Below are positions 39,879 to 62,548 of a stretch of 64,000 bases of DNA, piece after piece. Each line of letters starts with the position of its first letter. Within the stretch, counting starts at the first letter, position 1. The DNA is from Botryllus schlosseri (lineage: Eukaryota). A program made the position numbers and the translations under genes. Where the stretch lies: NCBI GenBank assembly GCA_051294905.1, contig CM119380.1, positions 14,632,001 through 14,696,000 on the forward strand. The letters are read 5' to 3'. Below the pieces are notes generated by a model that saw nothing but the letters and a program-made list of their open reading frames with translations, ran no database searches and had not been told where the DNA came from.

Positions 39879-39887
39879 TTTTGCAAC

Positions 39888-41693: not shown

Positions 41694-43308
41694 TATCATT
41701 GAACCAAAGTCTCCGATATTTTCTAACGCTATCAAGATCAAAGCAAAGAGTAAGAAAATAAAGTACCTGCAGTTACCCCAAACGTTGATTGTCTTATTGA
41801 CCGAGTCTCTTGTCACCCGTATTCTAATATGAGCCGCCGTCTCGAGCGAAATAAACTTCGCCCGTCTCATTACAGACACCTGATTAGGCTTAGGTCAGAC
41901 GGTCAGAGCCTTCAGTAAAGCAGTAAAGGTTCGGATTTAAAGCCTACCGAAATTACTATCGGTAATGTTACGTCACAACCCGTACAACTTGTATTACGTA
42001 GGATTCTATTGTGATCAGGGAATGACCTTCGCGTCAGTAAACGTGAACATAAACGTACATTTGTTGTGTTGAAGGCGCGATTTATTTATGATCATGAATA
42101 ATTAGAATTTCCGTAGAAGCATCAATGATTTCACATCGTTAGTGAGAGCCGCACGGAGAGCAGTCGAGAGCCGCATGCGGCTCGGAGAGCCGCGGTTGAG
42201 AATCACTGCTCCAGCCCATTATCTGCGTTATTTCAAGGTTTTCGATCCACCTTTTTGGGGTAGAGAATTTGTGTAGTTCGGAATTCTTGTATAGTTTGGG
42301 ATTGACTTTTTTGATCTTTGTTCCCAGTTCATAGATTGCATGCCTATGCCAAATTTCGGTCGGGCATTCGATCTTTTTTAGAGTCGCAATTTTTTCTATA
42401 TCGCATGCTTTTGCGAGGGACTCAATGTCGGGTATTCCGAAGCCCCCGTTTTCTTTTTCTGCGATCATTGATTTTCTGGCAATTGCCTCCATCTTTTCTG
42501 GTGACCATAGAAAGCCGAAGTACATTCTTTCTAGTTCTTTTCGGTCTTCTTTCGGGAGTGGAATGACTCTGGCGTTGTAGACGATTTTTGTCGTCGCCAT
42601 CGAGTTCAAGATTGCTTTCTTGCCTGCCCAAGTTAGCTCTCGATTTTTGTAAGCATTTAGGGTGCGTTTTACTTTCATCTTGTTTTCATCCCAGGTTTTG
42701 TGTATCTGGTTTGTCCCGAAATATTGACCTAGGATTTTTATTGTTGGGTGTTTTAGGTTTTCGTATTGGTCGATATTATATCCTCGTGTTCGATTGATTT
42801 GTAAAATCTCAGTTTTTTCTGGGTTAAGTTTTTGGCCAGTTGCTTTTTCGAATTTTTGGAACTCTCTGAATATGTGTTTGATATCCTCCCCTTTTCTTAG
42901 GAAGCAGGTGATATCATCCGCATATTGTTGTAGATTTATTTGTTCTTTCCCTATTTGGAATGGTCTGATTTTTCCATCTGCTTCAATTTGCCTTGCCAGA
43001 GGGTCGTTGCTTATGGAAAATAGTACCATACTTAGAGGGCAGCCTTGCCTAATGCCTCTCTCGAGTTTTATGGCTTTGGTCAGTGCTCCGTTTACCGCGA
43101 TCTTGGTGCTTGCAGTGTCGTATATGTTCTTTACTACGGAAATGTAGTGTTCTTGAATTTCGTATTTCCGCAGGATTTTGTAAAGGTATTTGTGGTGTAT
43201 TCGATCAAAAGCCTTTTCTTGGTCGAGGTTGACGATAATCAGTTCTTTTTTTCGTTCCTTGGCATATTCAATGGCGGCTCGTGTGTTTCGTAGGATATCA
43301 GTAATTTG

Positions 43309-43489
43309 AGTAGTATATAACAGCACGTTCTCATGCGGACCAATTAAATCGCAGCATTTGATCACGTGACTACTTTTGAATTTCAAATCAAACAGAGAAA
43401 AGCGCGCGAAAGAGTTATATCAATAGTGCTTCAATAGGGACAATGGGTGACAATATATGTCAATAACGGGCGTGACCGTCATTGTATTG
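43309..43489 (+). repeat. Left TIR of the Polinton
   Basis: 180/181 identical to the reverse complement of 62368-62548; looser similarity continues about 35 bp further. Confidence 0.96.
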
Positions 43490-43658
43490 ACAATGATTGT
43501 GTCAGCTGATTGTATAATGGGTGTTAATGGGTGTGGCTTAGGAGAGCGAACCGTGACAGCATAATGGGGTGTGTGCTAGCGAACGTTACGGTATTGTGCA
43601 ATGGTTAATACCATAGACAAGTCCAAAGCTAGTGATATTACACCATACACAGCTTTGA

Positions 43659-43868
43659 TCACGTACCAAATTTGTAATTATATATTTTTTTAGCATCACT
43701 ACAAATCATTCTTATTCCTATATACAGTCCAATTATTCCTATACAGCCATCCCATCGCAAGCTCCATCCCAGTTCCTCTCCCAGTGCTTGTCCAAATGTT
43801 CGAAGTATATTTTCGCTCGTTCTGGTGTTACACCCTCCATTGTTCAGGATTTGCAGTCTTCTGCCCAT
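43659..43868 (-). CDS. Possible small membrane protein, 69 aa
   Basis: ATG-initiated with a hydrophobic stretch GCIGIIGLYIGIRMIC; no other support. Confidence 0.25.
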   Translation of the reverse strand: MGRRLQILNNGGCNTRTSENILRTFGQALGEELGWSLRWDGCIGIIGLYIGIRMICSDAKKIYNYKFGT

Positions 43869-44195
43869 CTCGCCTAGCGTTCGTTGCTGTTGTTTTGATT
43901 AACGCGTCAAAGTGGGTACTTAGACCCACTCCAATCACGTGACTACTTTTGAATTTCAAATCAAACAGAGAAAAGCGCACGAAAGAGTTGTGTGTCCGTT
44001 ATTGCACAATGGGTAATAACCTAGCGATATTGCACCATACATAGCTTTGATCACGTGACAAGTTTGCAATCATATATATGTTTATTCCGCGATGGTGTGA
44101 TCATCATTGTATTGACAATGATTGTAGAAGAAGTTTAGGGGACTATTTAAGTCACAAATTTGATGCTAAGCCATTCAATACGAAATTGAGCGACG

Positions 44196-44522
44196 ATGGG
44201 AAGAATAGTGATTAACGATGTCAAATTCGAATCTCCAACAAATATTACAATGGACCAAACTTCAAAGAGTATAATAGTAACGGGTGTAGCGACGATAAAA
44301 TTTGAGCAGCAGTTCATGATAAAACGCCGTGAAGGATATACGTGGGTGATCATACGTGGCGAAGACAACGAAAAAAAATCAATGAAGATTCATGAGGAAG
44401 ATGTCCGCATAAATGGAAAGTGTATTACTATCAAACAAGGAACCGCCGTGGAATTAAACAGCCTATTCATGAAAAATTGTTACAGATTAGAAATGAGCGA
44501 CGCATCTCATCTCATACATTAA
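44196..44522 (+). CDS. Hypothetical Polinton protein, 108 aa, beta-rich
   Basis: ATG in good context, TATA-like TATTTAAG about 50 nt upstream. Confidence 0.6.
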   Translation: MGRIVINDVKFESPTNITMDQTSKSIIVTGVATIKFEQQFMIKRREGYTWVIIRGEDNEKKSMKIHEEDVRINGKCITIKQGTAVELNSLFMKNCYRLEMSDASHLIH

Positions 44523-44686
44523 TATATTTTTTGTTGTAGATTTGAAATGCGCTACGCATGTCATTTCATACATTAATCATATCATTCATTATTCTGTAAC
44601 CTATTTCTATTTACATGTATAATTAGATTGAATTATAATTTATTTGAAAGCAAGTGCGACAGTTCGAATACTATCATTCGATAGAC

Positions 44687-45166
44687 ATGCGTGCTTTGAA
44701 GCGTTTGATATATGAACAAGCAAAATTTAAGCAGAATGCTTACGAAGGGATCCGAGCAGGACCATTCGATGAAAAGAATATGTATAGTTGGTGGGCAACG
44801 ATCCAAGGACCAAACGGAACGCCCTACGAAGGTGGTGTGTTCAGATTATCAATCGAATATTCTACCGAGTATCCATTCAAGCCTCCTAAAATGCGATTTG
44901 AAACACGGATATTCCATCCTAACGTAAGCTGTAAAGGTACCATATGTGTCGATATTTTACAGAAGGAATGGTCACCAGCGATGACAACGTCCACTCTACT
45001 GATATCAATACGTTCATTGCTCGCTTCACCAAACCCTTATGATCCGATGGATCAAGAGAGTGCGGAAATGTATTTAAAAAATAAGGAACGTTATTTCCAA
45101 CTAGCTACTCAATATACCCGTAGACATGCAATGGAAGATACGCAAGTCACCCAGCAAGAAAAATAG
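44687..45166 (+). CDS. E2 ubiquitin-conjugating enzyme (UBE2D-like), 159 aa
   Basis: GP.GTPYEGGVF, YPFKPPK, FHPNV, catalytic ICVDIL, WSPA motifs; intronless; AATAAA at about 45229. Confidence 0.95.
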   Translation: MRALKRLIYEQAKFKQNAYEGIRAGPFDEKNMYSWWATIQGPNGTPYEGGVFRLSIEYSTEYPFKPPKMRFETRIFHPNVSCKGTICVDILQKEWSPAMTTSTLLISIRSLLASPNPYDPMDQESAEMYLKNKERYFQLATQYTRRHAMEDTQVTQQEK

Positions 45167-45275
45167 TGTTGTTTTAATCCACCGCGAGTAGCGTGGAATT
45201 GCATTATACATTCCGTATTGTTCTTGTAATAAATAATAAAAATCAACGTCTGGTTGCGTTGTTATTCGTCTGAAT

Positions 45276-45346
45276 GGGGACTTAGCTCAATGGTAGAGTA
45301 TCTGTCTTGCAAATAGAAGATACGGGTTCAATTCCCGTAGTCTCCA
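45276..45346 (+). tRNA. tRNA-Ala (anticodon TGC), 71 nt
   Basis: GGGGACT TA GCTC AATGGTA GAGT A TCTGT CTTGCAA ATAGA AGAT ACGGG TTCAATT CCCGT AGTCTCC A: all four stems pair, G3:U70, A73, A/B boxes, TTTT at 45351-45354. Confidence 0.92.
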
Positions 45347-45430
45347 CGACTTTTCTATTGATGCTGTATCTGACTAGAACACGAATGAGGAGCCGTAGTT
45401 GTTTTGCGATTTTATTACAGACATATCAAA

Positions 45431-45772
45431 CTAATAACAAGCATCATAAAATCGCGCGTTGTGTAACGCTTCGAATACGATTATATTTTTTACAACGATC
45501 GCATTCCCTTTAAATTCTATAAGAATAGGACAGGTACGCGGTAAACAGTAATGTTTGTCTTTGCAGACAGTGATTGTCGGAGATTCAATCTTACCGTAGT
45601 GAGGAACATGCAGTTTCTTCACTACGATCTTATTGGTACGATACATTATTTCACATGAGAAAGGAATAGTGATAGATCTCACTTTCGGTAATACAATCGT
45701 TTTTTCATAATACCTACGATCTCCATTACTACTCAAGCGTAGGGGACCAATACAAATGCGAGCCATAGTCAT
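45431..45772 (-). CDS. Hypothetical Polinton protein, about 111-113 aa, beta-rich
   Basis: TATA-like sequence upstream (~45810), AATAAA just past the stop. Confidence 0.6.
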   Translation of the reverse strand: MTMARICIGPLRLSSNGDRRYYEKTIVLPKVRSITIPFSCEIMYRTNKIVVKKLHVPHYGKIESPTITVCKDKHYCLPRTCPILIEFKGNAIVVKNIIVFEALHNARFYDACY

Positions 45773-45857
45773 GATTTACGTTCACATTCTTCTCCACAGC
45801 AAAATAGCGTATATAATAAGAATTCCAGAAATAACAGCGCGGTTGCAACGATAGTTA

Positions 45858-46598
45858 TTATTTCGATTTCTTCCATTGAGATTTTATCCAACTGAAACTT
45901 CTTTTTCGAATGAGATGATCGTGTTCATCCAATTTGAAGCTTGATGATATCGAACACTTTTGTCTCTTATCTAGTTGTCGCAATTTACACATAAGATCGA
46001 AGAATTTGATTTCGTCGTTTTCACGTATGACGGTTCTGAAATTCTTTGCAAAAGCACTACCGTCTTCAAAACACCAACTGATTTGATCGTCACTAACTGC
46101 ACTTATGAGAACAGTTTTGGATTTTACGTCTCGTTTGCGTTTGAGTGCTTGCGAAGCAGCGTCTTCTCGTAAATGAAATTTCAAATCGGCAGAGTTACCA
46201 CTATAACACTGCGCAAACATGAGTAGGTTTTTTGTATCTTTACGAAAGCTTTTTAATAGCTCACACATATCATCATCGAGTAGATGCCTATCATAAAATA
46301 CAAATCCGGAATCGCGAGCTTCAGGATCATTTTCTTTTGTGTTATTTGGACATGAAAAGCCGTGACCGACGAAATATATGAAGTTTATCTTGGCGCTACT
46401 ATCGGCCATCGTTTGAAGCTCTCTGGAAAAATTTCCAAGAGTGGCTTGCTCTTCACGCAACACTTTGATATCTTCAGTCTTGAATTTGAATTTCTGTACT
46501 AAGATATCTGTCATAATCTGAATGTCTTGTAACGTTCCTTCATTTTCGACATGGTGCGGCTTTCCGCGATAACACATCGATACTATAAGCGCATTCAT
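45858..46598 (-). CDS. Metacaspase-like cysteine protease (peptidase C14 / caspase-hemoglobinase fold), 246 aa
   Basis: NALIVSMCY...GTLQDIQIM...F.F..EDIKVL...ATLGNF...FIYFVGHG (His) ... MFAQCYSG (Cys) ... VLISAVSDDQIS...GSAF follows metacaspase order; TATATAA about 35 nt upstream of ATG 46598. Confidence 0.85.
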   Translation of the reverse strand: MNALIVSMCYRGKPHHVENEGTLQDIQIMTDILVQKFKFKTEDIKVLREEQATLGNFSRELQTMADSSAKINFIYFVGHGFSCPNNTKENDPEARDSGFVFYDRHLLDDDMCELLKSFRKDTKNLLMFAQCYSGNSADLKFHLREDAASQALKRKRDVKSKTVLISAVSDDQISWCFEDGSAFAKNFRTVIRENDEIKFFDLMCKLRQLDKRQKCSISSSFKLDEHDHLIRKRSFSWIKSQWKKSK

Positions 46599-46662
46599 GA
46601 TGACACTGACTAGATCCCGAGCAATAACCACTTATATACTCCGATGAATACACACGAATTTA

Positions 46663-46980
46663 TTAAAAGCGATTTCTCAAAAATTCCCATAATTTTAGTT
46701 TACGAAAAACGACAAGTTCACCGCGGTTACGACGAATAATTCTATGCTTCGACAACACATCTATATACATACAATTTTTAGGAAAACGCACTGGTATCCA
46801 ATCAGACCCGCGGAAAATTGTAACTTCGTTATCATGCGGGTAAATGCGTATGTGAAACGGCTCGAAAGAAATTCTATGAATACGATTTGCATTCATGACA
46901 ATAATTTTTCCTTGGACTTTCATGTAGGCCTTCTCATCATCTCCAAAGTATTCTATGATGGTGAAACTAGTTGCTCCCAT
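46663..46980 (-). CDS. Hypothetical Polinton protein, 105 aa
   Basis: Tightly packed between protease and metacaspase, same strand. Confidence 0.55.
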   Translation of the reverse strand: MGATSFTIIEYFGDDEKAYMKVQGKIIVMNANRIHRISFEPFHIRIYPHDNEVTIFRGSDWIPVRFPKNCMYIDVLSKHRIIRRNRGELVVFRKLKLWEFLRNRF

Positions 46981-47414
46981 TTCAAGATTCTAACGAAGTC
47001 CACTACGATATCGTCGTTCTCTTTTCGATCATCACCGAAGTGATCCAAATACTGTAGTGTGCTCATACCAGTAGAGCGTTTGACGATATATGCAATTGCA
47101 TGAGCTCCACAAGCGTCTGACCTTTCATGCTGTAATGGTTTTATTGAGCTAGTATAATTTTCGGGATCAAGGAAACTCGCAATCTCAATCCTGAATGGAG
47201 TGATACCCAGACTATCGTGAAAATGGGTTTCATATTGATCAGCATATATGCAAACCCAGTGACTACCTTCCTTGTGACTTTCATCATAATTGATCACAAT
47301 TGAATAAGGAGGTTTTGGGCGCTGAGGGAGTTGATCAATAGGGAAATTCCCTAGATAGTGTTGTTTCGTAGCATGGTAACTATACAATATTTCATCTATT
47401 TCTTGTCCGTTCAT
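46953..47414 (-). CDS. Adenain-like maturation cysteine protease, 153 aa
   Basis: GSHWV (His), HDSLG (Asp), LQ...SDACG (Gln, Cys); start overlaps the capsid stop as ATGA. Confidence 0.93.
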   Translation of the reverse strand: MNGQEIDEILYSYHATKQHYLGNFPIDQLPQRPKPPYSIVINYDESHKEGSHWVCIYADQYETHFHDSLGITPFRIEIASFLDPENYTSSIKPLQHERSDACGAHAIAYIVKRSTGMSTLQYLDHFGDDRKENDDIVVDFVRILKWEQLVSPS

Positions 47415-48688
47415 ATCACGGTCACCGTGCGAGCTTGGCTTATTTCCAGTATTTTTTGAAATTCCATAAAGCACAGCAGTGTCGTTTCGCTCTCAACACC
47501 TGCCGCAGGAAAGGTGATTCGAAGACTGATCGTTCCACTTTTCTGCAGCTCGAAGCAGTCATCTAAATCGTCACCTCGCAAATTATATGCTAGAAGCGTG
47601 TATCCATTTGCGAACTCGGAAGGGGAAATCAAGCCTTTTTGTCGTTCGATGGCACCCATAGATTGAATGAGATTTAGGTAGGCCTCGGAATAATGATTGT
47701 TTTCAAAATCAAGTTCGTAGCCACCTTCCGGCATAAGGAAACCATTTACTTTCAATTCAACCCGATTCATTTTATTATGAATAAAATTATATGGGTTCTT
47801 ATCGAGTGCTCCTTGGAATGCCTCAGTTTTCACCATGGCTATAATCAAACGTGTCGGCAGGGTTCCCGAATACAGATTACCAATATCGATTTGAGTGGTG
47901 TTAGCCGCAAAAGTTCGAGTCAGCAGCTTCATGTCCATAAAGGGATACCTAGCCGGTGCGTCTACCATCAAGGCAGATTTTACATCTTCTGTTACCCGCA
48001 CTCCACATAGGTGCAATTCTTTTTTGATGATTTTGAAATTGCTGGTAGCGGCTCCAAACAGAAAGAAACTTTTCGGATTCAATGTCAATTCGAACTCTAA
48101 CGGAACCTCGTCCAAAATATAGCGGTCTTGCAAACACAACCCGTGATGTATTTTACCGCGAATTTCAACGACTTTGCTCCCGGCATACGGCAAACTTCTC
48201 GCCTTATGACCTTTGTTAACCGCATCATTGCCTAGGCCCGAATCATCCAATTGCTTCTCTGTGTCTTTGACCCATCCTTGTGTAAGAAGCGTTGTCTCTT
48301 GCACGTCGTGAGGTGTGAACAGATAGTGTAAGTAGGCCGAATAACATTGTAGCTTCACGTCTTGTTTCAGGGTATGGTTCCCGACTTTGATGTGAAGTTG
48401 AGAAATTAGAGAATCAAGAATGTTATTCACAACTCCAATGCTGTCCGTGGCAGCTAGATCCGCATCGCCTTTCAATAGTTTCAAGCGAAATAAAAAATAG
48501 GATTCGCTTAAATCAATAAAATCGTCACATCCTTCATAGCGGTAAATAATTACGCTTGCGTTGTCCGACACAGGCGGAATCTTAATGATCCGTTTCTTCT
48601 CCACGCTTGTTTGGGTAGGTGGGAGTTGAAAAAGATCCAAGCTAGGATGTACGCCTTCGGCAGATTTCGCGTGAATTAGCTCCGTCAT
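47411..48688 (-). CDS. Major capsid protein (double jelly roll), 425 aa
   Basis: Polinton-type start LDLFQLPPTQTS, P+LIIAMV...F.G....NP+NF.H, C-terminal GT+SL...F; position in the morphogenesis block. Confidence 0.9.
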   Translation of the reverse strand: MTELIHAKSAEGVHPSLDLFQLPPTQTSVEKKRIIKIPPVSDNASVIIYRYEGCDDFIDLSESYFLFRLKLLKGDADLAATDSIGVVNNILDSLISQLHIKVGNHTLKQDVKLQCYSAYLHYLFTPHDVQETTLLTQGWVKDTEKQLDDSGLGNDAVNKGHKARSLPYAGSKVVEIRGKIHHGLCLQDRYILDEVPLEFELTLNPKSFFLFGAATSNFKIIKKELHLCGVRVTEDVKSALMVDAPARYPFMDMKLLTRTFAANTTQIDIGNLYSGTLPTRLIIAMVKTEAFQGALDKNPYNFIHNKMNRVELKVNGFLMPEGGYELDFENNHYSEAYLNLIQSMGAIERQKGLISPSEFANGYTLLAYNLRGDDLDDCFELQKSGTISLRITFPAAGVESETTLLCFMEFQKILEISQARTVTVI

Positions 48689-48738
48689 CTTTCGCGAGTC
48701 TGCTAGCTAATGAAAAAATAAAGTAGGGAGAGTCCTAT

Positions 48739-49107
48739 TTAATCGAAAATGTCCCGACGGCGCTTTTTCCGTTTCGTGGTCTTTTTTCTAGGTGCCTTTC
48801 TCTTGCCTAGGAAGTTGTCAAGAGCTTTGCTAGCTGCTTGTTTACCTCTTATTTTGAAGCTTTCACCGACGTTTTGCCCACGCAATACGTCAGAAGCTAC
48901 TTCTGCTCCTGTATGGAGTAGCTGTTTGCCGAGAGCTTTCGCCCCTTTTGATATCAATGGTACAACACTTCGTCCCAAACTACGAAAGAGATTTCCTAAA
49001 CCGTGTCCTCTTTGCACTCGTCCTCGAAAATAGTTTATGCCATTACCACTTTGCACACGATAGTATTGTTGAAAGGCATCGCGATCACAACAGTAATGTG
49101 CTCTCAT
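48739..49107 (-). CDS. Conserved Polinton virion protein with QxGxG motifs, amphipathic helix and basic tail, about 122 aa
   Basis: QSGNG and QRGHG followed by LGNLFRSLGRSVVPLISKGAKALG; C-terminal RKKTTKRKKRRR. Confidence 0.75.
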   Translation of the reverse strand: MRAHYCCDRDAFQQYYRVQSGNGINYFRGRVQRGHGLGNLFRSLGRSVVPLISKGAKALGKQLLHTGAEVASDVLRGQNVGESFKIRGKQAASKALDNFLGKRKAPRKKTTKRKKRRRDIFD

Positions 49108-49834
49108 GATGACGTAAAGCAAGTGTGATATCAATCATGGACCCCTTCAGATTTATAGCCGTACCTTTATCGTCTTTGATACTAATCTGAATTCGACGAG
49201 CGTCTTCCGTAATCATAGGGAAAAAGTATATTTTTTCGAATATATGATGTTGATATTCATTGACACTACTCGTAATGGGGATGTTTCGTAATAGCGGAGC
49301 TTTCGTGTCCCCGACTGATTGCGGTCGAATGAGATCGGTATAAATTAATAAATTGGTGATAGGCGTAATGGAATCCCTCAGAGTGATCTCTGAAGTTAAA
49401 TAATTCCCTCCTAGCAGCTTTTTCTTCCTAAGCTTTCCATACACGAAAACCGGATTTCTGACTCTGGTTGGATTCTTCAGGAAATTAGGAAACGCACCCG
49501 ATTTGTAAGGTGGAATGACTAACATACCAGTAGAACTTCCTAGCTGGTTAATATATACTTGGTCCTGCGTGCGATTGATTCTATCAATCAAACTTTTGAA
49601 GTCATAATAATTACCCTTGGGGTAATAATAATGATTTTTACTTCCCACTTGAATCAGAGGCGATGTTTTCTCATCCTGAAATTGCCATAACAGAGCGTCG
49701 AAAGCAGGTAAAGTAGGTTGGAACTCGTTGCGAATCGAGAACTCCGCTAGGCCCAGTTCGTATTTTCCTGCAATCGGTCGTGCTAGCTCGAGAACAAAAT
49801 CTGATTCCAAACTGCTAATGTGAATGTATTTCAT
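49085..49834 (-). CDS. Minor capsid (penton-like) protein 2, 249 aa
   Basis: C-terminal LLIYTDLIRPQSVGDTKAPLLRNI...ISIKDDKG motif typical of Polinton pentons. Confidence 0.8.
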   Translation of the reverse strand: MKYIHISSLESDFVLELARPIAGKYELGLAEFSIRNEFQPTLPAFDALLWQFQDEKTSPLIQVGSKNHYYYPKGNYYDFKSLIDRINRTQDQVYINQLGSSTGMLVIPPYKSGAFPNFLKNPTRVRNPVFVYGKLRKKKLLGGNYLTSEITLRDSITPITNLLIYTDLIRPQSVGDTKAPLLRNIPITSSVNEYQHHIFEKIYFFPMITEDARRIQISIKDDKGTAINLKGSMIDITLALRHHESTLLL

Positions 49835-50661
49835 AGTGCGATACCGCGCTTTCGGAATTGAAGTACAGCGCTCGATGGAGCGCTTCGAAACGGAATTTCA
49901 CCCCCTTTGTGATCCAGCAAGGAAATTTTTACCCGTTCCAATCTATTTATACTTAGCGGAAGAAAGAAAGGTTTTACGTAATATTTTGAAAACACCTTCT
50001 TATCTCCTTCGACTTTTACAACTCGTAATAAACGCTGTAGTGAACCGCTAGACTCTTGGGGTTCAATGATGTCGCAATGAACGTATACGAAATCGATTTT
50101 CGACAAGGGTCGTACATCAAAATTGAGATGTATTGTCTTGTCAGTAAAAAAGTATGCGGATAGCTCTGCTCTATTCTTCGGCAATATGAAACGTAGGAGC
50201 GTAAGGGTAACTACCGCCAATTCTAGATGCTCAAGTGTCCCAGTATAATCGTACTCTCTGGTGTCGATTCGATATCGCGTATCCTCTCCCGGTCTTGCAC
50301 TAGCTGCAATGTTTTTGTGTGGAATCGAAACCGTCAGGCTATCACTTTCAGGAAAACACTTGACTTTCACATCGGGATTAATGCTCTCCAACGATTTAAA
50401 CATGTCATATACAGATTCATATTCACCAATTTTGAACTTCAATCTTCTTGTGACTTCACTGGGACCCATAATGTCGAAACCGTAGTAGCTATTTGTGATT
50501 GGGATCCGTTCGTTAAAATCGGTTGGGAAGCCAATCTCAGTCAACGCGACTTCGCTTCTTTCTACATTTCTGGGGGTGTCTAGTTCGTTGGTGTAAACCG
50601 CAGCTGTATTTTGTGGAAACCTGTCCATGGAGGCATTGGAAAATAACGTAATATAACTCAT
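49831..50661 (-). CDS. Minor capsid (penton) protein 1, 276 aa
   Basis: YITLFSNASMDRFPQNT...EVALTEIGFP start and VYVHCDIIEP...LLRVV...ISLLDHKG end. Confidence 0.85.
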   Translation of the reverse strand: MSYITLFSNASMDRFPQNTAAVYTNELDTPRNVERSEVALTEIGFPTDFNERIPITNSYYGFDIMGPSEVTRRLKFKIGEYESVYDMFKSLESINPDVKVKCFPESDSLTVSIPHKNIAASARPGEDTRYRIDTREYDYTGTLEHLELAVVTLTLLRFILPKNRAELSAYFFTDKTIHLNFDVRPLSKIDFVYVHCDIIEPQESSGSLQRLLRVVKVEGDKKVFSKYYVKPFFLPLSINRLERVKISLLDHKGGEIPFRSAPSSAVLQFRKRGIAL

Positions 50662-50870
50662 AGTTTGGGTATCTTTGGAGCCGGTAACATATATCCCACA
50701 CACGATGATAACAGCGACACCCAAAGCTCTTTGTTGTCTTGCACGACACTCAAATTATACAGCGAAAAACTCACGATGAGCAGTATAATTATAACTTGAG
50801 CAATGAATTGATAAAAGTTACGGTTCGACGATATCTTTTTGATCGACCCAGGTATTGAATTCCGGTCCAT
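50658..50870 (-). CDS. Small two-helix membrane protein, 70 aa
   Basis: FIAQVIIILLIVSFSLYNL and ELWVSLLSSCVGYMLPAP; stop overlaps the penton start (ATGA). Confidence 0.7.
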   Translation of the reverse strand: MDRNSIPGSIKKISSNRNFYQFIAQVIIILLIVSFSLYNLSVVQDNKELWVSLLSSCVGYMLPAPKIPKL

Positions 50871-51822
50871 AATTCAACCACTTCACTAAAAACTGACTGC
50901 GTTTACCACGCCGTCGTCTCTTTATAATCTTTTCGACTTGCCATTTTTGCGGTTCAGTAACGGGTTGAATTTCTTGTCTGTAAAATTGTCCGTCAATTAT
51001 TTCGTTATTGTAATCACGTAAGCGATACGTTGGCGGATCTCCTTTCATGGCTTTGACAATGTAAAATATCTCGGGTTGCCAGTTGGGTCGACTAGACTTC
51101 TCAAACAGATTGCGAATTTTCGAGATGCGTACAGGGGTCCCGACCGCTAAAGTGGGTAGTTTGGAGTCGCGAAATCCATACATTTTTTGCCAAATGCTTT
51201 CTTGATTATGTCTATTAACTTCACTAGGAGGGATCCCTAACGAGCGGTGTCTGGTGTGATTGTACGAATAGACCATATCATCTAGCACATCGATATAATT
51301 GCTGGTGTTATTTTTCGTGAAATAGCGGTAGAAGATTTGACGGAAACTACGGATAGCCCTTTCCGCAATCGAAGATTTCAATTCGCTTTTCGTGTAAAAG
51401 TACCGCACCTTGTTTTTTCTGAGAAAATTCTGAAAAGCTCGACTCGAGTATTCTGTACCTCTGTCTGTCTGTAGCACTAATGGAAGGCTCTCTTTGAAAA
51501 CTTTTTTGAAAGCAGATATCATGTTGTCACTCGATTTATTTTTAATCGGAATCATCCACACATACTTGGAGAAAACATCAATAATAAGAACGATATATCT
51601 AAATCCACGATTGTATTTTGAAATAGACTGTACGTCGATTAAATCGCTTTGAAACTGCGCTCCGATCCCTGACACAACAACTTGACGACGTTTAAATCTT
51701 TTTCGAATGGGAAAGTGATAGGTATAACTATCTTGTCCCTTCAACCACTCGCTGTCTTTCTGTAGGTAAGCACCCCTATAAGAATTGGGTTTTTTGGGAT
51801 CGAAGTAGTCTAGTTTGTCCAT
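50818..51822 (-). CDS. Retroviral-like (rve) integrase with C-terminal chromodomain, 334 aa
   Basis: QSDLIDV, LQTDRGTEY, SIAERAIR (DDE); WQVEKIIKRR...FLVKWLNYGPEFNTWV (chromo). Confidence 0.96.
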   Translation of the reverse strand: MDKLDYFDPKKPNSYRGAYLQKDSEWLKGQDSYTYHFPIRKRFKRRQVVVSGIGAQFQSDLIDVQSISKYNRGFRYIVLIIDVFSKYVWMIPIKNKSSDNMISAFKKVFKESLPLVLQTDRGTEYSSRAFQNFLRKNKVRYFYTKSELKSSIAERAIRSFRQIFYRYFTKNNTSNYIDVLDDMVYSYNHTRHRSLGIPPSEVNRHNQESIWQKMYGFRDSKLPTLAVGTPVRISKIRNLFEKSSRPNWQPEIFYIVKAMKGDPPTYRLRDYNNEIIDGQFYRQEIQPVTEPQKWQVEKIIKRRRRGKRSQFLVKWLNYGPEFNTWVDQKDIVEP

Positions 51823-52680: not shown

Positions 52681-52712
52681 GAATGATGATTATCGTTCGA
52701 GCAGCGCGCTAT

Positions 52713-53333
52713 TTATTCCAAATACACAGTCATGCGTTCGTCCGGAAATATGTTGGTACGAAGTCGATACTTTTCCGGTGTCTCTTGGGTTAAATCAATG
52801 GCAATATATGAATAAGGTTCGCGAGTTGCTCTTTTGTATGCTTCTGTAAGCATAGTAGGATTGTCCGGGAACATTTGCCGTGAAAGGTAACGTATTTGTG
52901 AAACGTCACGTGGATTTTTAAACACCACAATATAGCTAGCGCTGAGAGTGACGTCACGAAAACCACCGCCTCGGTGAAATATGTTCTGGACTAATAGGAT
53001 TACTGAGACATTATTATGATGGGAATGACGTATGAATAGGTCCCTCGCTTGTTGTGCTTCCGTCATCATGTCGTCTAGTATTATCAGAGTGTGTCCATTA
53101 CCACCCTGCTGTAAATGTTCTAACTCGCCTAGACCTTGGTGGAATTTCACACCCTTCATTTTATCGTATAACGGCTGATAATTATTGTACAGCCAAATAA
53201 TCTTCCTTGGATAAGGCGCGATGATCTTCTTGGCATTTTGCACAAGGCGATAGGCAAAACATGTCTTACCGCAGCTCGAAGGTCCAGCTATGATCATCCT
53301 GAACGGAGAATTTAAGACACGTGCACGCTCCAT
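52713..53333 (-). CDS. A32/FtsK-like genome packaging ATPase, 206 aa
   Basis: Walker A GPSSCGKT, Walker B IILDDM, HSHHNNVSVILLVQN, FKNPRD. Confidence 0.95.
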   Translation of the reverse strand: MERARVLNSPFRMIIAGPSSCGKTCFAYRLVQNAKKIIAPYPRKIIWLYNNYQPLYDKMKGVKFHQGLGELEHLQQGGNGHTLIILDDMMTEAQQARDLFIRHSHHNNVSVILLVQNIFHRGGGFRDVTLSASYIVVFKNPRDVSQIRYLSRQMFPDNPTMLTEAYKRATREPYSYIAIDLTQETPEKYRLRTNIFPDERMTVYLE

Positions 53334-53360: not shown

Positions 53361-56300
53361 TTACAAAGCAAGCGGTACAGTATGAATCCCATCACTCAAT
53401 ACAATTCTTTTATAGTAACCGTATGATAGAGCGGAACGATATTGATGATATGTATATATATCTCCCTGAAAGCAACGGAATCCGGAGTTATACCCTCCTG
53501 ATATAGAACGGTTTTGCAATACACCTTTGAAATCTTTGAAAGTTTTGCGGGCCGTTTTACTCAAACCTTTCGATGAATATTTATCTGTATCACCCGAGCA
53601 ATAGTAGGTTTTTGAATTGAGGCCAACAAACCCCCGTCCACTCCATTCTACTTTAAACAAACCCGGTGTTCGCTTAGAGTAATTATGAGCAGCGACACAG
53701 CACGGTTCATCGATTTTGAATGCGACCGGGTCCCTCTCGAAGTCTGTTTTATGCTTAACGCACGCCTGCTGAACCAACCACTGATCATGAACTTCAAAGA
53801 ACTCTTTACGCTTTGAAGGTATGATCAATGAGTAGATAGAATCAGCTGATATCGCTAAATAACAGCTGTCGGTGTCAAGTTCAAGATGAAATTGATCACA
53901 ATCGTTTATGTAGACGTGGAGGAAGTCATACATGAACGACAACATCCGTTGCTTACTGTGATTAAATATGAAGAAGCCTACGATGACGGGTTGATCAAGT
54001 TGAGTCGTATCGGGCCGTGAGGTTACTTCAATTAAGTCCGAATCAATTTCATCAGCGTCGATAAAATTCGGTTTTTTGATGAGCGCTTGAACTTCTTCGC
54101 AAGTCACATATTTGTGATTTTTATATTTGGCTGGATTTTGTATAGTGGTTCCGAAAGCACTATTTCCAAGATTCTTGAAGGTTAATGCCTGCATTTCAAG
54201 TGCATGGTCTCTAGGAATAACGTCACCTTTACGCCGTAGCGTAGTTACGCGATCTACGAAGTTGCGAAATAGTCTTTTAGGTTCATATTCCAAACATTGA
54301 TAAACACGTGTGACCACCATTCCGTGACGCAAGTACCAACTCAACAAGTCGGTAGTAACCAATTGCTTTTCGATGAAATAACTGGACGCGAGCGCTTTTT
54401 TTGGAAACTTGACTTTGTTTTCCCTTGCGTATTGAGCCATATGCGGACCGATATCACATTCATTAATTTCGATGTGCTTAAAGAAAGGCGGTAACTCTTC
54501 AAACTTAGATTTCAAATGATCTGGGCAGTGCGCGTCGCATTCTATCGCACCGAAAAAGCGATTGTTAACGACTCGATCGAGTATTTGTTCTTGCGATAGT
54601 AAATATTCTTTTGTCACATTCCTTTGTAAATGTGCAACGAGGCGCGCAATGTCTGGATCGCGCTTCATTGCTTTCCATTCACATTCGCGCACTCGAATGA
54701 CCTGATATCCTAGGCGTTCAAAATAGGCGGTGGTTTCTTCGGTTTTAATGCGTCGATTATGATTAATATTTTGATTATTAGATATACAAGGACACGAGTG
54801 CCACCAACATCCGTCCATGTTGAATATTAACTTCCGCTCCGCTGAGTATCCATCTACGCTAATTCTACGGGCTCCCAGTTTCACTTGCGGACCGTTCCAA
54901 GCGTGACGAATCGGAATACCGCGAACAATGCTTTGATAAGTTAACCACTCGAGTTCGATCATGGACGGATAAGTCTGTTTTCTATGAAATTTCTGTTTCA
55001 CTTCATCATACAGCCAACGGGTGACATATCCAGTTGGCATATTGAGATCAATGGCGTGCAAATATAATGCGTTGCTGTCATACCCTACTATAGATTTCAC
55101 GTCTTTGGCTGCGTCTCCATACTTCAAAATGCGAATTTTGGTCTCGTCTGCCATTGCATACCGGTTTGTAATTTGTGCCAATCCACCGATTAAGTTATTA
55201 GTTACAGTGTGATGGAGATCGGCATTGGCTTTATTGAATAAAGCGATTTCCCACCTTTCATCGAACATAAGTCGATTAGCTATACTCGGTAAGCTGACGT
55301 GATTTTTGAACATGTCAATCCCCAGTTTTTTATAAAAGTCGAAGTGGTTATTTACCGCGACGAGAAAGCCGACCACATCACATTCATTGTAGTATTTTAA
55401 AAAATCCCTCATTGTTTTCATATCGAGACGCTTCCAAGTATCGACGCATTCTTGGTATTGTTCAGCTGTAATATTATGCCCGCGAAGACTACTATAAAAG
55501 CTATCGTGTGGCGGTAGCGATGTTTCTTTCAATTTATCAATATGCGTCATATATTCGTATGGAAAGAAAAATTTATTGTTTACTCCATCACCGTACACTT
55601 TCAAATACGCATCCAGGCTATATCCCGGAGCGAGGAATAGAGATATATCTAGAAATTTCAATTTATTTGTGGAGATAGTGAGGTAACTGCTGTTTCGCTT
55701 CAATACAAAAAAGCCGCTCTCCTCTCGCAAAAGAGCAATCAAATATTTTTTACACAGATTTAAATCGTAGCGAGCCGAGTTGAATCCGATTACGGGTATT
55801 TGATCTAACCACGTTTCAAAGCGATGATACAACAACTCCAGGTACGATCGCGTTTTAATCGGATCAATCACTTTACGTTCTTCAATCAAGTCGCGAAGAG
55901 CGGTCAACTCGGTGTCATATATAGCACGCATTTGCGAAGACGCAATTTCTTGAATTTCATGAAGCTTATCGACCATTTCTTTAATTAGATCACGCGGGTT
56001 GCCATTGGAAATAAATGTAGTTGTTTCGTTCGTGACATTATCACACAGTGAGACCGAGAGCGGGACATGTTTACTGGTAAATTTTACTTTGGCTGTATCG
56101 GGCTTGAGATTTTCTTTTACTAAGAGACTCTCAAAGTCAAAGCAAATTCTGAATTTGTAAAAACGTTTTTCTTTACTAACAAATATACCTTCATTTTCCA
56201 AATCTTCAAACACCGTCGCTTTAGGACGATAAACACCAGAACCGTAGCGATACCTTTTCTCAGAATTACAATGATTTTTAATATGTCGTTTTAAACTACT

Positions 56301-57227
56301 TTTCAAGGTAAAGAATGTTTTACACGAATCACACATAAAAGTAGACGTATAATTCTCTATATTCAAAATTAAAGAACAGTGATTTTCGAGCATGTGAATA
56401 TGAATTGTGAGTCCAGACGCATTGGAAGTACGACGCAAGACCGTGGTTTGTTCACGTTTCTCGTAAAGCAATATTCTAACGTTAAAACACGCTTCCACTT
56501 TCGATAGTTGGTCGAGGGATATACCATTGGCAACTGAAATTCCGTAACGATTTTCAAATTGCGTAGTCAATTGAGAAACATGACTTTCGTCACGTTTTTT
56601 AATTAATCTAAATGAGACGCATCGAAACAGACAAAGATTATCTGTATATGGTACACCTTCACGATTACGAATAAAAGCACTGATATATCTACATTTGGAT
56701 AATCTTTCCATTTCTTCTGAGACAACGCCCCCGCTAAGTAAAGGTCTTTCCATTTCATACAGGAATAAAGTAATGTGTAGCACCTCCGAACAAACAAATT
56801 TTGTATCCGGTCTGACTCGATTCGCATAATCGTAACCGGCCGATAAATCAATTGCATTTCTAAACGAATCAAAATCTTCACGCGATATGATAGTTCTTGG
56901 GACATCGAGGACAGCTTGCGATGATTGGGGGTGAAAATACGTATATCGCTCAGACTCGCGATTATATAGTAGATACCCAAAGCCATAATTTATTTTAAAT
57001 TGTCTAAATCGTTGCGGGTATATACTTGCGATACGCGCGTGAATGTCTGCGGGGTCTCGTTCAATCATCCGAATATTGACTATATGTCGCACGCGATTTC
57101 TCGAAGTCCACGTTGAGTCAATGATCGAATCGTAGTGCTCTTCAATTACTTCGACGGCGGCATCTTCAAAGCCCAAGGATTCATCGACGATCCAATCTCG
57201 ATCCAAATATCGCCTGCGTAGAGTCAT
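53361..57227 (-). CDS. Protein-primed family B DNA polymerase (pPolB), 1288 aa
   Basis: Exo I FDFES, Exo II GFNSARYD, Exo III YNECDV, Pol YDSNALY, KNLGNSAFG, LDTDS; C2H2 finger and VSR-like insert. Confidence 0.97.
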   Translation of the reverse strand: MTLRRRYLDRDWIVDESLGFEDAAVEVIEEHYDSIIDSTWTSRNRVRHIVNIRMIERDPADIHARIASIYPQRFRQFKINYGFGYLLYNRESERYTYFHPQSSQAVLDVPRTIISREDFDSFRNAIDLSAGYDYANRVRPDTKFVCSEVLHITLFLYEMERPLLSGGVVSEEMERLSKCRYISAFIRNREGVPYTDNLCLFRCVSFRLIKKRDESHVSQLTTQFENRYGISVANGISLDQLSKVEACFNVRILLYEKREQTTVLRRTSNASGLTIHIHMLENHCSLILNIENYTSTFMCDSCKTFFTLKSSLKRHIKNHCNSEKRYRYGSGVYRPKATVFEDLENEGIFVSKEKRFYKFRICFDFESLLVKENLKPDTAKVKFTSKHVPLSVSLCDNVTNETTTFISNGNPRDLIKEMVDKLHEIQEIASSQMRAIYDTELTALRDLIEERKVIDPIKTRSYLELLYHRFETWLDQIPVIGFNSARYDLNLCKKYLIALLREESGFFVLKRNSSYLTISTNKLKFLDISLFLAPGYSLDAYLKVYGDGVNNKFFFPYEYMTHIDKLKETSLPPHDSFYSSLRGHNITAEQYQECVDTWKRLDMKTMRDFLKYYNECDVVGFLVAVNNHFDFYKKLGIDMFKNHVSLPSIANRLMFDERWEIALFNKANADLHHTVTNNLIGGLAQITNRYAMADETKIRILKYGDAAKDVKSIVGYDSNALYLHAIDLNMPTGYVTRWLYDEVKQKFHRKQTYPSMIELEWLTYQSIVRGIPIRHAWNGPQVKLGARRISVDGYSAERKLIFNMDGCWWHSCPCISNNQNINHNRRIKTEETTAYFERLGYQVIRVRECEWKAMKRDPDIARLVAHLQRNVTKEYLLSQEQILDRVVNNRFFGAIECDAHCPDHLKSKFEELPPFFKHIEINECDIGPHMAQYARENKVKFPKKALASSYFIEKQLVTTDLLSWYLRHGMVVTRVYQCLEYEPKRLFRNFVDRVTTLRRKGDVIPRDHALEMQALTFKNLGNSAFGTTIQNPAKYKNHKYVTCEEVQALIKKPNFIDADEIDSDLIEVTSRPDTTQLDQPVIVGFFIFNHSKQRMLSFMYDFLHVYINDCDQFHLELDTDSCYLAISADSIYSLIIPSKRKEFFEVHDQWLVQQACVKHKTDFERDPVAFKIDEPCCVAAHNYSKRTPGLFKVEWSGRGFVGLNSKTYYCSGDTDKYSSKGLSKTARKTFKDFKGVLQNRSISGGYNSGFRCFQGDIYTYHQYRSALSYGYYKRIVLSDGIHTVPLAL

Positions 57228-62367: not shown

Positions 62368-62548
62368 CAATACAATGACGGTCACGCTCGTTATTGACAT
62401 ATATTGTCACCCATTGTCCCTATTGAAGCACTATTGATATAACTCTTTCGCGCGCTTTTCTCTGTTTGATTTGAAATTCAAAAGTAGTCACGTGATCAAA
62501 TGCTGCGATTTAATTGGTCCGCATGAGAACGTGCTGTTATATACTACT
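62368..62548 (-). repeat. Right TIR of the Polinton
   Basis: Reverse complement of 43309-43489 with one mismatch. Confidence 0.96.

What the first reader, a model, noticed from the sequence alone, without database searches (positions are those of the whole stretch)
45276..45346. Intact tRNA-Ala(UGC) gene inside the Polinton
Seen: full cloverleaf with the Ala identity pair G3:U70, A73, internal A/B boxes, no encoded CCA and a TTTT terminator 4 nt downstream, lying between two convergent polyA signals. Its anticodon stem (TCTGT/ATAGA) differs from the usual animal cytosolic tRNA-Ala yet still pairs, which argues for selection rather than a SINE. Known: tRNA genes occur in phages and giant viruses; adenovirus VA RNAs and MHV68 tRNA-like RNAs are Pol III products. 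Inference: a translation supplement, a counter to host anticodon nucleases, or a VA-like decoy; I know no Polinton precedent.
Basis: partly seen in the sequence, partly recalled or inferred. Interest (0 to 1): 0.85.

Follow-up and report, generated by a model that had tools for sequence, protein, structure and literature searches.

The report
Conserved tRNA-Ala gene inside a Polinton
A complete alanine tRNA gene sits inside a young, intact virus-like Polinton transposon and is kept in the same spot in a diverged relative. It therefore looks like selected cargo of one Polinton lineage, similar to the tRNA genes already reported in virophages and Polinton-like viruses.

Summary
Window 45276-45346 (+) is a canonical 71-nt tRNA-Ala(UGC) (Rfam 73.4 bits, E 3.5e-14; ARAGORN). 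It has G3:U70, A73, no encoded CCA, A and B boxes, and TTTT starting 5 nt after A73. It lies between convergent AATAAA signals.

It sits 1,967 bp inside a 19,240-bp Polinton (43309-62548). That element has 181-nt TIRs (99% match), a 6-bp duplication AATTTG, pPolB, an A32-type ATPase, an rve+chromo integrase, a capsid candidate and an adenain-like protease. It also carries a UbcH5-like E2 and a metacaspase-like peptidase.

One related element (Logan contig L003) carries a tRNA-Ala(UGC) at the same junction, with homologous flanks:
- The two tRNAs are 65/72 identical, against about 72% at neutral proxies (p=0.002).
- Four of five stem changes keep a standard pair.
- The anticodon loop and the alanine identity elements are unchanged.

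Relatives with pPolB 37-55% identical have no tRNA; the 55% one is cut short of the junction. It is not a SINE, a pseudogene or a VA-like RNA.

The best reading is a working, Pol III-transcribed decoding tRNA acquired once by this sub-lineage. Why alanine is unresolved, because the codon evidence is weak. tRNA genes are already reported in virophages, Polinton-like viruses and MELD viruses. I found no report for animal Polintons. Interest is moderate.

The parts
45276..45346 (+). tRNA-Ala(UGC) gene, 71 nt, with G3:U70, A73 and no encoded CCA
   Evidence: ARAGORN; Rfam RF00005 73.4 bits, E 3.5e-14; cloverleaf as minimum-free-energy fold; homologous copy at L003 675-745 (-), 68.3 bits
45283..45293 (+). 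A-box-like internal Pol III promoter element (TAGCTCAATGG)
   Evidence: Read from the sequence. The match to the consensus is from general knowledge and was not tested functionally.
45325..45335 (+). B-box-like internal Pol III promoter element (GGTTCAATTCC; GGTTCGAATCC in L003)
45351..45354 (+). TTTT run starting 5 nt after A73, a candidate Pol III terminator
   Evidence: It is not conserved in L003, which has TTT there and its first T4 138 nt downstream.
45228..45240 (+). Two overlapping AATAAA signals downstream of the E2 gene, 35-42 nt before the tRNA
   Evidence: a comparable AATAAA lies 45 nt before the tRNA in L003 (L003 791-796, - strand)
45411..45416 (-). AATAAA signal of the convergent 113-aa gene
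   Evidence: equivalent signal at L003 607
44687..45166 (+). Cargo gene: ubiquitin-conjugating enzyme E2, UbcH5/UBE2D-like, upstream of the tRNA on the same strand
   Evidence: Pfam UQ_con 5.3e-47; best solved-structure matches are UBE2D2/D3 at 1.9e-45; the HPN motif and the catalytic Cys context are visible in the translation
45431..45772 (-). Conserved 113-aa gene of unknown function, convergent with the tRNA
   Evidence: Homolog P0124 is 69% identical, E 7.6e-35; a 111-aa gene lies in the same position after the caspase-like gene on Logan contigs
45858..46631 (-). Cargo gene: C14 peptidase, metacaspase-like
   Evidence: Pfam Peptidase_C14 1.4e-12; solved-structure matches to metacaspase-4 and -9 at 2e-7; homologs P0121-P0123 at 87, 64 and 50% identity
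43309..62548 (-). Whole Polinton/Maverick element, 19,240 bp. Core genes are on the - strand. It is inserted into a reverse-transcriptase ORF.
   Evidence: TIRs; AATTTG at 43303-43308 and 62549-62554; the flanking RVT_1 pieces match profile positions 3-50 and 49-203
43309..43489 (.). Left terminal inverted repeat (181 nt)
   Evidence: 99% complementary to the right arm
62368..62548 (.). Right terminal inverted repeat (181 nt)
53361..57227 (-). Protein-primed family-B DNA polymerase (pPolB), 1288 aa
   Evidence: Exonuclease and polymerase motifs visible in the translation; 814 homologs, many with PF03175 precomputed
52713..53333 (-). A32/FtsK-type packaging ATPase
   Evidence: Pfam Pox_A32 2.5e-10
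50818..51822 (-). Retroviral-type integrase with a C-terminal chromodomain
   Evidence: Pfam rve 4.3e-12 and Chromo 3.7e-11
47411..48688 (-). Major capsid protein candidate (double jelly roll)
   Evidence: Weak Pfam DJR-like_dom hit, E 0.03; 48% identical to the syntenic L001 gene and 26% (E 1e-40) to the Tara element gene
46953..47474 (-). Adenain-like cysteine protease candidate
   Evidence: 30% identity (E 9e-15) to the syntenic L004 gene, which has a faint Peptidase_C5 hit on record

Best explanation
This is a working elongator tRNA-Ala(UGC) gene carried as cargo by one sub-lineage of animal-type Polintons, the lineage that also carries a metacaspase-like peptidase and a UbcH5-like E2. The proposed mechanism runs in four steps:
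1. Host RNA polymerase III reads it from the internal A and B boxes and, in this copy, stops at the TTTT run that starts 5 nt after A73.
2. Host enzymes trim the ends and add CCA.
3. Alanyl-tRNA synthetase charges it through G3:U70 and A73.
4. It decodes GCA and, by wobble, GCG while the element's genes are expressed.

Shown here: the gene's intactness, its place inside the element, one ancestral acquisition, and conservation above the neutral level. Inferred: transcription, charging, and the benefit. The benefit I favour is extra supply for GCA/GCG codons. GCG is about twice as frequent in the element as in the resident transposons around it.
For: Intact canonical tRNA:
- 73.4 bits, all 21 pairs standard, identity set G3:U70 and A73, no CCA, A and B boxes, TTTT.

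Inside a young intact element:
- 99% TIRs and a 6-bp duplication.

A second, diverged element (L003) has tRNA-Ala(UGC) at the same junction:
- It lies downstream of and convergent with the 109/113-aa gene. The 3' trailer is homologous, starting CGAC then TTT. This points to one acquisition rather than two captures.

Conservation:
- 65/72 identical, against 10/40 differences at 4-fold sites and 20/77 and 14/42 in the two spacers. Fisher p=0.002.
- Of 5 stem substitutions, 4 keep a standard pair. 41/42 stem cells pair, against 40-53% for slid registers.
- The anticodon loop, acceptor stem and T stem are invariant.

Not a repeat:
- The B-box 14-mer has no other match in the window.
- The tRNA's 3' 29-mer has no match in IMG/VR or JGI metagenomes.

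Codons:
- GCG is 24.7% of Ala codons in the element against 13.5% in neighbouring transposon ORFs, p=0.0016.

Precedent:
- tRNA genes occur in virophages and Polinton-like viruses, where codon supply is the favoured reading (PMC6905037, PMC12220804).
Against: - Only two copies could be read, and there is no double-sided compensatory change.
- The L003 copy has a G-A mismatch at the top of the anticodon stem. It has only TTT after the gene, and its first T4 is 138 nt downstream.
- The cognate set GCA+GCG is not significantly enriched (50.6% vs 43.5%, p=0.11). The GCG excess goes with a general CpG excess (CpG obs/exp 1.29 vs about 1.0), and CCG is raised as well.
- The comparison set was resident transposons, not host genes. 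The host tRNA pool is unknown.
- No expression or charging data exist.
- Relatives with pPolB 37-55% identical have no tRNA, so the gene is dispensable for the family at large.
Confidence: 0.6

Rival explanations
1. Passive hitchhiker. A host tRNA-Ala gene was picked up once with the accessory arm, is still intact, and gives the element no benefit. Its conservation reflects limited time, or copying from host tRNA genes.
For: The codon-supply argument is weak. More distant relatives have no tRNA. The L003 copy has lost the nearby T4 run and has one mismatched pair. Gene order next to the tRNA differs between the two elements, so the arm is fluid.
Against: The tRNA is about 2.8 times less diverged than 4-fold sites and spacers in the same two elements, p=0.002. 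Stem changes are biased towards keeping pairs. The identity elements and the anticodon are untouched.
Confidence: 0.2
2. The DNA matters more than the RNA. A TFIIIC/TFIIIB-bound tRNA gene acts as a barrier or roadblock between two convergent Pol II units about 265 bp apart, limiting read-through, transcriptional interference and antisense or double-stranded RNA.
For: In both elements the gene lies exactly between convergent AATAAA signals, 35-45 nt after the signal of the same-strand gene. This holds although that upstream gene differs: E2 in the window, a P0126-type gene in L003. A and B boxes are kept, and the B box is closer to the consensus in L003. Barrier and roadblock activity of tRNA genes is known from yeast and mammals; this is general knowledge and was not tested here.
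Against: A barrier needs only the A and B boxes. Here the acceptor stem, G3:U70, A73, the anticodon loop and the pairing of all four stems are also kept. Relatives with the same convergent layout manage without a tRNA.
Confidence: 0.1
3. The RNA serves in a non-decoding role. It could be a source of 5' halves with the GGGG end that repress host translation, or a spare or decoy substrate against a host tRNA-cleaving defence.
For: The 5' GGGG and the intact anticodon loop are conserved. The gene sits next to two host-manipulation-type genes, the E2 and the C14 peptidase. Phage tRNAs that offset anticodon nucleases are known; this is general knowledge.
Against: GGGG and the loop are required for an ordinary tRNA-Ala anyway, so they do not discriminate. 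No invertebrate nuclease that targets tRNA-Ala is known to me. Nothing in the sequence is specific to this reading.
Confidence: 0.06
4. It is a SINE head, a tRNA pseudogene, a VA-like Pol III decoy or a chance match.
For: None beyond its location in a transposon-rich region.
Against: E 3.5e-14 and full-length. There is no room for a SINE body or tail: 64 nt to the next poly(A) signal and 84 nt to the next stop. There is no second copy in the window, and the gene is syntenic in a relative. Rfam reports only tRNA and no VA family. At 71 nt it is far shorter than a VA RNA.
Confidence: 0.02

Closest known systems
tRNA genes of virophages and Polinton-like viruses (Paez-Espino et al. 2019, PMC6905037; cryptophyte PLV study 2025, PMC12220804)
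   Same: A single canonical tRNA gene is carried inside a 15-40 kb capsid-encoding element of the Polinton/virophage assemblage. It is lineage-specific rather than universal, and its origin is untraceable by similarity. Codon supply is the favoured but unproven role.
   Different: Those elements come from protists and metagenomes. The isotypes reported are mostly Met, Gln, His, Leu and Arg, not Ala. This one is in a classical pPolB + rve-integrase Polinton with TIRs and a 6-bp duplication, in a genome with BEL/Pao retrotransposons (animal-type). It sits in an arm with an E2 and a C14 peptidase.
Adintoviruses / animal Polintons-Mavericks (Starrett et al. 2021, PMC8502044)
   Same: The gene set and order match: pPolB, packaging ATPase, integrase, capsid genes, adenain-like protease, and a variable set of host-derived accessory genes aimed at cell-death pathways. 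That paper lists Bcl2, IAP and gasdermin homologs.
   Different: That paper flags tRNA genes only in 'MELD viruses with other replicases' (Fig. 6 legend), not in the pPolB/integrase adintoviruses. The word 'caspase' does not occur in its text, and its two 'ubiquitin' mentions concern OTU and UCH hydrolases, not an E2.
tRNA genes of bacteriophages and giant viruses
   Same: Virus-borne tRNAs are kept under selection. The roles proposed are codon supply or replacing tRNAs depleted by host defence.
   Different: This one depends on the Pol III internal promoter and on host CCA addition. It is a single gene, not an array. Its best phage matches are at most 80% identical and of another isotype.
Adenovirus VA RNAs and gammaherpesvirus tRNA-like Pol III transcripts
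   Same: Pol III-type internal promoter inside a DNA virus genome.
   Different: Those RNAs are not canonical chargeable tRNAs. This gene keeps the full cloverleaf and the alanine identity set, and Rfam assigns it to tRNA only.

Membership tests
Canonical nuclear-type elongator tRNA-Ala gene | Cloverleaf scoring above the tRNA family threshold | tested here: met
   Rfam 73.4 bits against a gathering score of 29, all pairs standard; ARAGORN
Canonical nuclear-type elongator tRNA-Ala gene | Alanine identity set: G3:U70 wobble pair and A73 | tested here: met
   Read from the Rfam alignment; both elements keep them
Canonical nuclear-type elongator tRNA-Ala gene | No encoded CCA; internal A and B boxes; T run of 4 or more just downstream | tested here: met
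   Window: CGAC then TTTT at 45351-45354, with both boxes present. In L003 the T4 run is not met; it has TTT and its first T4 at +138.
Canonical nuclear-type elongator tRNA-Ala gene | Transcribed, CCA-added and aminoacylated | not testable with these tools
   No expression data are reachable
Canonical nuclear-type elongator tRNA-Ala gene | Similarity to the host's own cytosolic tRNA-Ala genes; eukaryote-mode tRNAscan-SE isotype score | not testable with these tools
   No host genome, eukaryotic tRNA set or tRNAscan-SE is available. The 5' 23-mer is absent from 185,579 prokaryote genomes.
Virus- or Polinton-borne tRNA cargo | Gene lies within the element's boundaries | tested here: met
   1,967 bp inside the left TIR; TIRs and the AATTTG duplication define the ends
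Virus- or Polinton-borne tRNA cargo | Shared by related elements at the same position | tested here: met
   L003 has it at the same junction, in the same relative orientation, with a homologous trailer. Only one relative could be read; three further Logan contigs had no DNA available.
Virus- or Polinton-borne tRNA cargo | Evolves under constraint relative to neutral sites | tested here: met
   7/72 against 44/159 differences, p=0.002; 4 of 5 stem changes keep a pair
Virus- or Polinton-borne tRNA cargo | Matches a codon the element uses more than its host does | tested here: inconclusive
   GCG is up (p=0.0016) but GCA+GCG is not (p=0.11). The comparison set was resident transposons, not host genes.
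Polinton/Maverick | Terminal inverted repeats and a 6-bp target-site duplication | tested here: met
   181-nt TIRs at 99%; AATTTG on both flanks
Polinton/Maverick | Protein-primed PolB and retroviral-type integrase | tested here: met
   pPolB motifs and PF03175-bearing homologs; rve 4.3e-12
Polinton/Maverick | Packaging ATPase, adenain-like protease, double-jelly-roll capsid protein | tested here: met
   ATPase: Pox_A32 2.5e-10. The protease and capsid protein rest on weaker evidence: syntenic homologs and faint or weak Pfam hits.
tRNA-derived SINE | tRNA-like head followed by an unrelated body and tail, flanked by duplications, in dispersed copies | tested here: not met
   No space for a body or tail; single copy in the window; 0 hits for the 3' 29-mer in two collections; syntenic in a relative
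VA-RNA-like Pol III decoy | About 160-nt imperfect hairpin RNA that is not a chargeable tRNA | tested here: not met
   71-nt canonical cloverleaf; Rfam reports tRNA only

The most novel reading that the evidence does not exclude
This would be the first tRNA gene shown to be under selection in an animal pPolB/integrase Polinton. It forms one cassette with a metacaspase-like peptidase and a UbcH5-like E2. It may work twice: as a charged tRNA-Ala during the element's expression, and as a Pol III-factor-bound barrier that keeps the two convergent cargo genes from reading into each other.
Probability: 0.15. Interest if true: 0.7.

Novelty: new member of a known kind. Interest (0 to 1): 0.5.

Why it matters
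Polintons are the main large DNA virus-like elements of animal genomes, and their accessory genes show how they deal with the host cell. A conserved, apparently functional tRNA gene would extend a habit known from phages, giant viruses, virophages and protist Polinton-like viruses to an animal-type Polinton. It would also mean the element draws on host Pol III as well as Pol II. Its diagnostic bases give a simple expression marker for this element lineage. The neighbouring E2 and metacaspase-like genes point to interference with ubiquitin and cell-death pathways.

Tried and rejected
Searches that found nothing:
- The exact 41-mer and a degenerate 29-mer of the tRNA in IMG/VR and JGI metagenomes gave 0 hits.
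- The 5' 23-mer gave 0 hits in IMG/VR and in 185,579 prokaryote genomes. It gave 13 metagenome loci, all phage-like tRNA arrays of various isotypes that share only the generic 5' half. They say nothing about origin.
- blastn against phages gave at most 80% identity, to tRNAs of another isotype.
- The window's proteins are not in the 15-billion-protein collection, so the host genome could not be identified or mined.
- The 532-aa ORF (57982-59580) has no homolog and no family or structure hit.
- Relatives of the caspase-like gene and of pPolB were sought in IMG/VR; none was found.
- A literature search for the run accessions found nothing.

Searches blocked:
- The closest caspase-gene relatives (87% and 64% identical) lie on Logan contigs whose DNA the tool could not deliver. 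Only one extra copy of the junction could be read.

Ideas rejected:
- SINE head: no body, tail or dispersal.
- VA-like decoy: wrong size and shape.
- tRNA as integration target: the element's ends lie in a reverse-transcriptase ORF, 2 kb from the tRNA.
- Animal mitochondrial origin: the D and T loops are canonical.

Not done: comparison with the usual animal cytosolic tRNA-Ala, for lack of a reference from any tool.

Full report
**1. The observation**

ARAGORN finds exactly one tRNA in the 64-kb window, tRNA-Ala with anticodon tgc at 45276-45347 on the + strand. Rfam's tRNA model matches 45276-45346 over its full length at 73.4 bits (gathering score 29, E 3.5e-14), with no non-standard pair. 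It is the only Rfam family found in the window.

The following can be read from that alignment and from the sequence:
- The acceptor stem has G3:U70, and the discriminator is A73.
- The D stem is GCTC/GAGT. The anticodon stem is TCTGT/ATAGA with one G-U pair. The loop is CTTGCAA.
- The variable region is 4 nt, the T stem is ACGGG/CCCGT and the T loop is TTCAATT.
- The usual tertiary partners are present: U8 and A14, A15 with U48, G18 and G19 facing the T loop.
- The bases after A73 are CGAC, so CCA is not encoded. TTTT follows at 45351-45354.
- An A-box-like TAGCTCAATGG lies at 45283-45293 and a B-box-like GGTTCAATTCC at 45325-45335.
- AATAAA occurs on the + strand at 45228 and 45235, after the stop of the upstream gene at 45166. 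It occurs on the - strand at 45411-45416, after the stop of the convergent gene at 45431.

The one claim I could not check is that the anticodon stem differs from the usual animal tRNA-Ala, because no tool here supplies an animal tRNA reference.

**2. The surroundings**

The gene lies inside a complete Polinton.
- Inverted repeats of 181 nt, 99% complementary, lie at 43309-43489 and 62368-62548.
- Both ends start AGTAGTATATAAC and are flanked by AATTTG, at 43303-43308 and 62549-62554. This is the 6-bp duplication typical of Polintons.
- The element (43309-62548, 19,240 bp) interrupts a reverse-transcriptase ORF. Its two pieces match Pfam RVT_1 positions 3-50 and 49-203.

The core genes, all on the - strand, are:
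- a 1288-aa protein-primed PolB, with motifs visible and 814 homologs, many carrying PF03175;
- an A32-type ATPase and an rve integrase with a chromodomain;
- a capsid candidate (weak DJR hit; conserved in relatives);
- an adenain-like protease candidate.

I saw no broken core gene.

The left arm holds accessory genes:
- a 108-aa ORF;
- a UbcH5/UBE2D-like E2 at 44687-45166 on +;
- the tRNA;
- a conserved 113-aa gene on the - strand;
- a metacaspase-like C14 peptidase.

The rest of the window is other transposons: BEL/Pao, hAT and PIF/Harbinger. BEL/Pao elements and the named pPolB relatives from the gastropods Pomacea and Littorina point to an invertebrate animal host. The species could not be identified, because none of the window's proteins is in the protein collection.

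**3. Relatives**

The 113-aa gene next to the tRNA has one representative homolog, P0124 (69% identity). P0124 lies on Logan contig L003.

L003 reads, in order: caspase-like C-terminus, the 109-aa gene, a tRNA-Ala(tgc) on the opposite strand at 674-745 (ARAGORN; Rfam 68.3 bits), a 113-aa gene, and the E2 C-terminus. The tRNA is therefore at the same junction and in the same relative orientation.

Its 3' trailer is recognisably homologous, starting CGAC then TTT and continuing alike, while its 5' leader has diverged. This means one ancestral acquisition rather than two captures.

Gene order beside the tRNA differs. The extra L003 gene (P0126) is 31% identical to the window's 108-aa ORF, which lies on the other side of the E2.

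More distant elements with the same core synteny have no tRNA by ARAGORN or Rfam:
- L001 (pPolB 55% identical), which is cut off before the junction;
- L004 (39%);
- a roughly 16-kb element recurring in Tara Oceans metagenomes, L018-L026 (37%).

The tRNA thus belongs to the sub-lineage that carries the caspase-like and E2 arm.

**4. Selection**

The two tRNAs are identical at 65 of 72 positions.

In the same pair of elements:
- 4-fold degenerate sites differ at 10 of 40;
- the two spacers flanking the tRNA differ at 20 of 77 and 14 of 42 aligned positions, besides indels.

Seven of 72 against 44 of 159 gives Fisher p=0.002. Against the 4-fold sites alone, p=0.052.

The seven differences are distributed as follows:
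- two are in the D stem;
- three are in the anticodon stem;
- two are in the T loop, at positions that vary among tRNAs.

Of the five stem changes, four keep a standard pair (G-U to G-C, C-G to U-G, U-A to U-G). One produces G-A at the top of the anticodon stem in L003. Forty-one of 42 stem cells pair, against 40-53% when the partner is slid.

There is no double-sided compensatory change, and with two sequences the shuffle control carries no information. The acceptor stem, T stem, anticodon loop, G3:U70 and A73 are invariant.

**5. What it is not**

- It is not a SINE head. Only 64 nt separate the gene from the next poly(A) signal and 84 nt from the next stop. There is no tail and no second copy in this transposon-rich window. 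The 3' 29-mer has no hit in IMG/VR or JGI metagenomes, and the position is syntenic in a relative.
- It is not VA-like: it is 71 nt, a canonical cloverleaf, and a tRNA-only Rfam hit.
- It is not an integration target, since the element's ends are elsewhere.
- It is not an animal mitochondrial type, since the D and T loops are canonical.
- Its origin is untraceable here. The 5' 23-mer is absent from 185,579 prokaryote genomes and from IMG/VR. The 13 metagenome matches are phage-like tRNA arrays of several isotypes, unrelated beyond that generic 5' half. Phage matches are at most 80% identical and of another isotype.

**6. How it most likely works**

The features that are kept are those a decoding tRNA needs: all four stems, the tertiary positions, the anticodon and the AlaRS identity set. 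They go beyond what a Pol III promoter alone needs.

I therefore favour a Pol III-transcribed, host-processed, AlaRS-charged tRNA that reads GCA and GCG (confidence 0.6 that it is a working tRNA).

The purpose is less clear. GCG makes up 24.7% of alanine codons in the element against 13.5% in the neighbouring transposon ORFs (p=0.0016). However, GCA+GCG together are 50.6% against 43.5% (p=0.11). CCG is raised too, and the element as a whole has a CpG excess (obs/exp 1.29 against about 1.0). Codon supply is plausible but not shown, and the comparison set is not host genes.

Cautions:
- L003 lacks a nearby T4 run; its first is 138 nt downstream.
- L003 has one mismatched pair.
- No expression data were reachable.

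**7. Rivals**

- *Neutral hitchhiker (0.2).* It fits the weak codon case and the patchy distribution. It does not fit the excess conservation.
- *DNA-level role as a Pol III-factor barrier between convergent Pol II units (0.1 as the sole role).* It fits the constant placement 35-45 nt after the same-strand AATAAA in both elements, despite a different upstream gene. It does not explain why the parts irrelevant to the promoter are kept. It could be an added role.
- *Fragment or anti-nuclease roles (0.06).* Nothing specific speaks for them.
- *SINE, pseudogene, VA-like RNA or chance (0.02).*

**8. Comparison with what is known**

tRNA genes have been reported in 18 high-quality virophage genomes and 12 further virophage sequences (PMC6905037). 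A scan of 8300 Polinton-like virus and virophage genomes gave 558 tRNA hits (PMC12220804). They are also flagged in MELD viruses with other replicases in the adintovirus paper (PMC8502044, Fig. 6 legend).

My searches of the held library ('Polinton' with 'tRNA gene', 'adintovirus' with 'tRNA', and 'Maverick/Polinton/tRNA/cargo') turned up no report of a tRNA gene in an animal pPolB/integrase Polinton. The library is incomplete, so this is not proof of absence.

The finding is therefore a new member of a known kind, not a new kind.

**9. Verdict**

Interest is moderate (0.5): a real, conserved, probably functional tRNA in an animal-type Polinton, next to unusual E2 and metacaspase-like cargo, with function still to be shown by descriptive expression and distribution data.

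**10. Slip**

In my reasoning I twice began to write a vertebrate tRNA-Ala sequence from memory.

Noticed in passing
window 44687-45166 (+) and 45858-46631 (-): The Polinton carries a UbcH5/UBE2D-like E2 (HPN motif and catalytic Cys context present) and a metacaspase-like C14 peptidase (His-Gly and Cys-x-Ser-Gly motifs present). They flank the tRNA. This looks like a ubiquitin and cell-death cassette, and the adintovirus paper I read does not list these two genes.
   Followed up: partly
window 43303-43308, 62549-62554, 42139-43386 and 62537-63199: The Polinton is inserted in a reverse-transcriptase ORF of another retroelement. Its two pieces continue each other in the Pfam profile (positions 3-50 and 49-203). 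The 99% identical TIRs and the perfect AATTTG duplication indicate a recent insertion.
   Followed up: yes
window 43361-43500 vs 43934-44125; also 43626-43692 vs 44018-44084: Parts of the left TIR and the subterminal region are repeated about 570-625 bp further in, at 84-98% identity. A 47-nt unit is also duplicated just after the 108-aa ORF (44477-44577). These may be repeated promoter or origin modules.
   Followed up: partly
window 43309-62548 vs flanks: CpG observed/expected is 1.29 inside the Polinton against about 1.0 in the rest of the window. The host DNA here is not CpG-depleted, and the element has a composition of its own.
   Followed up: partly
window 7947-8462, 15098-15607, 17972-18487, 24906-25421; ORF 18615-24842: Four copies of a roughly 520-nt repeat (LTRs) bracket two BEL/Pao retrotransposons. 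One has an uninterrupted 2075-aa polyprotein ORF. The other has its coding region in pieces. In addition, 1-300 and 341-431 recur at 15512-15811 and 15852-15942 (100% identity, 15,511 bp apart), and the 213-aa and 172-aa ORFs at 345-1579 recur at 15856-17090.
   Followed up: no
L018-L026 (ENA/Logan, Tara Oceans and other marine metagenomes): A roughly 16-kb element with the same core gene order encodes an identical 1369-aa pPolB on 21 contigs from many marine samples. That is consistent with a circulating virus or a widespread planktonic host. It has no tRNA, and it encodes one PC4-like protein (two in L021).
   Followed up: partly
window 57982-59580 (-): This 532-aa ORF lies inside the Polinton, upstream of pPolB. 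It has no homolog in 5.8 billion proteins and no Pfam or solved-structure hit. A nearby 80-nt repeat lies at 59960-60169.
   Followed up: partly
window 53361-57227 (-), residues about 297-319 and about 800-860: The pPolB carries a weak C2H2 zinc-finger match (E 0.026; relatives have PF00096 on record). It also has a Cys/His-rich insertion between the exonuclease and polymerase parts that is conserved across relatives (invariant C807, H810, C849 in A4).
   Followed up: no
window 39738-39881 and 39888-41879 (-); 6050-6874 (-): A hAT-type transposase ORF lies next to a 71-nt near-perfect palindrome, and there is a PIF/Harbinger DDE transposase ORF. The whole window is a transposon nest with no evident host gene.
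   Followed up: no
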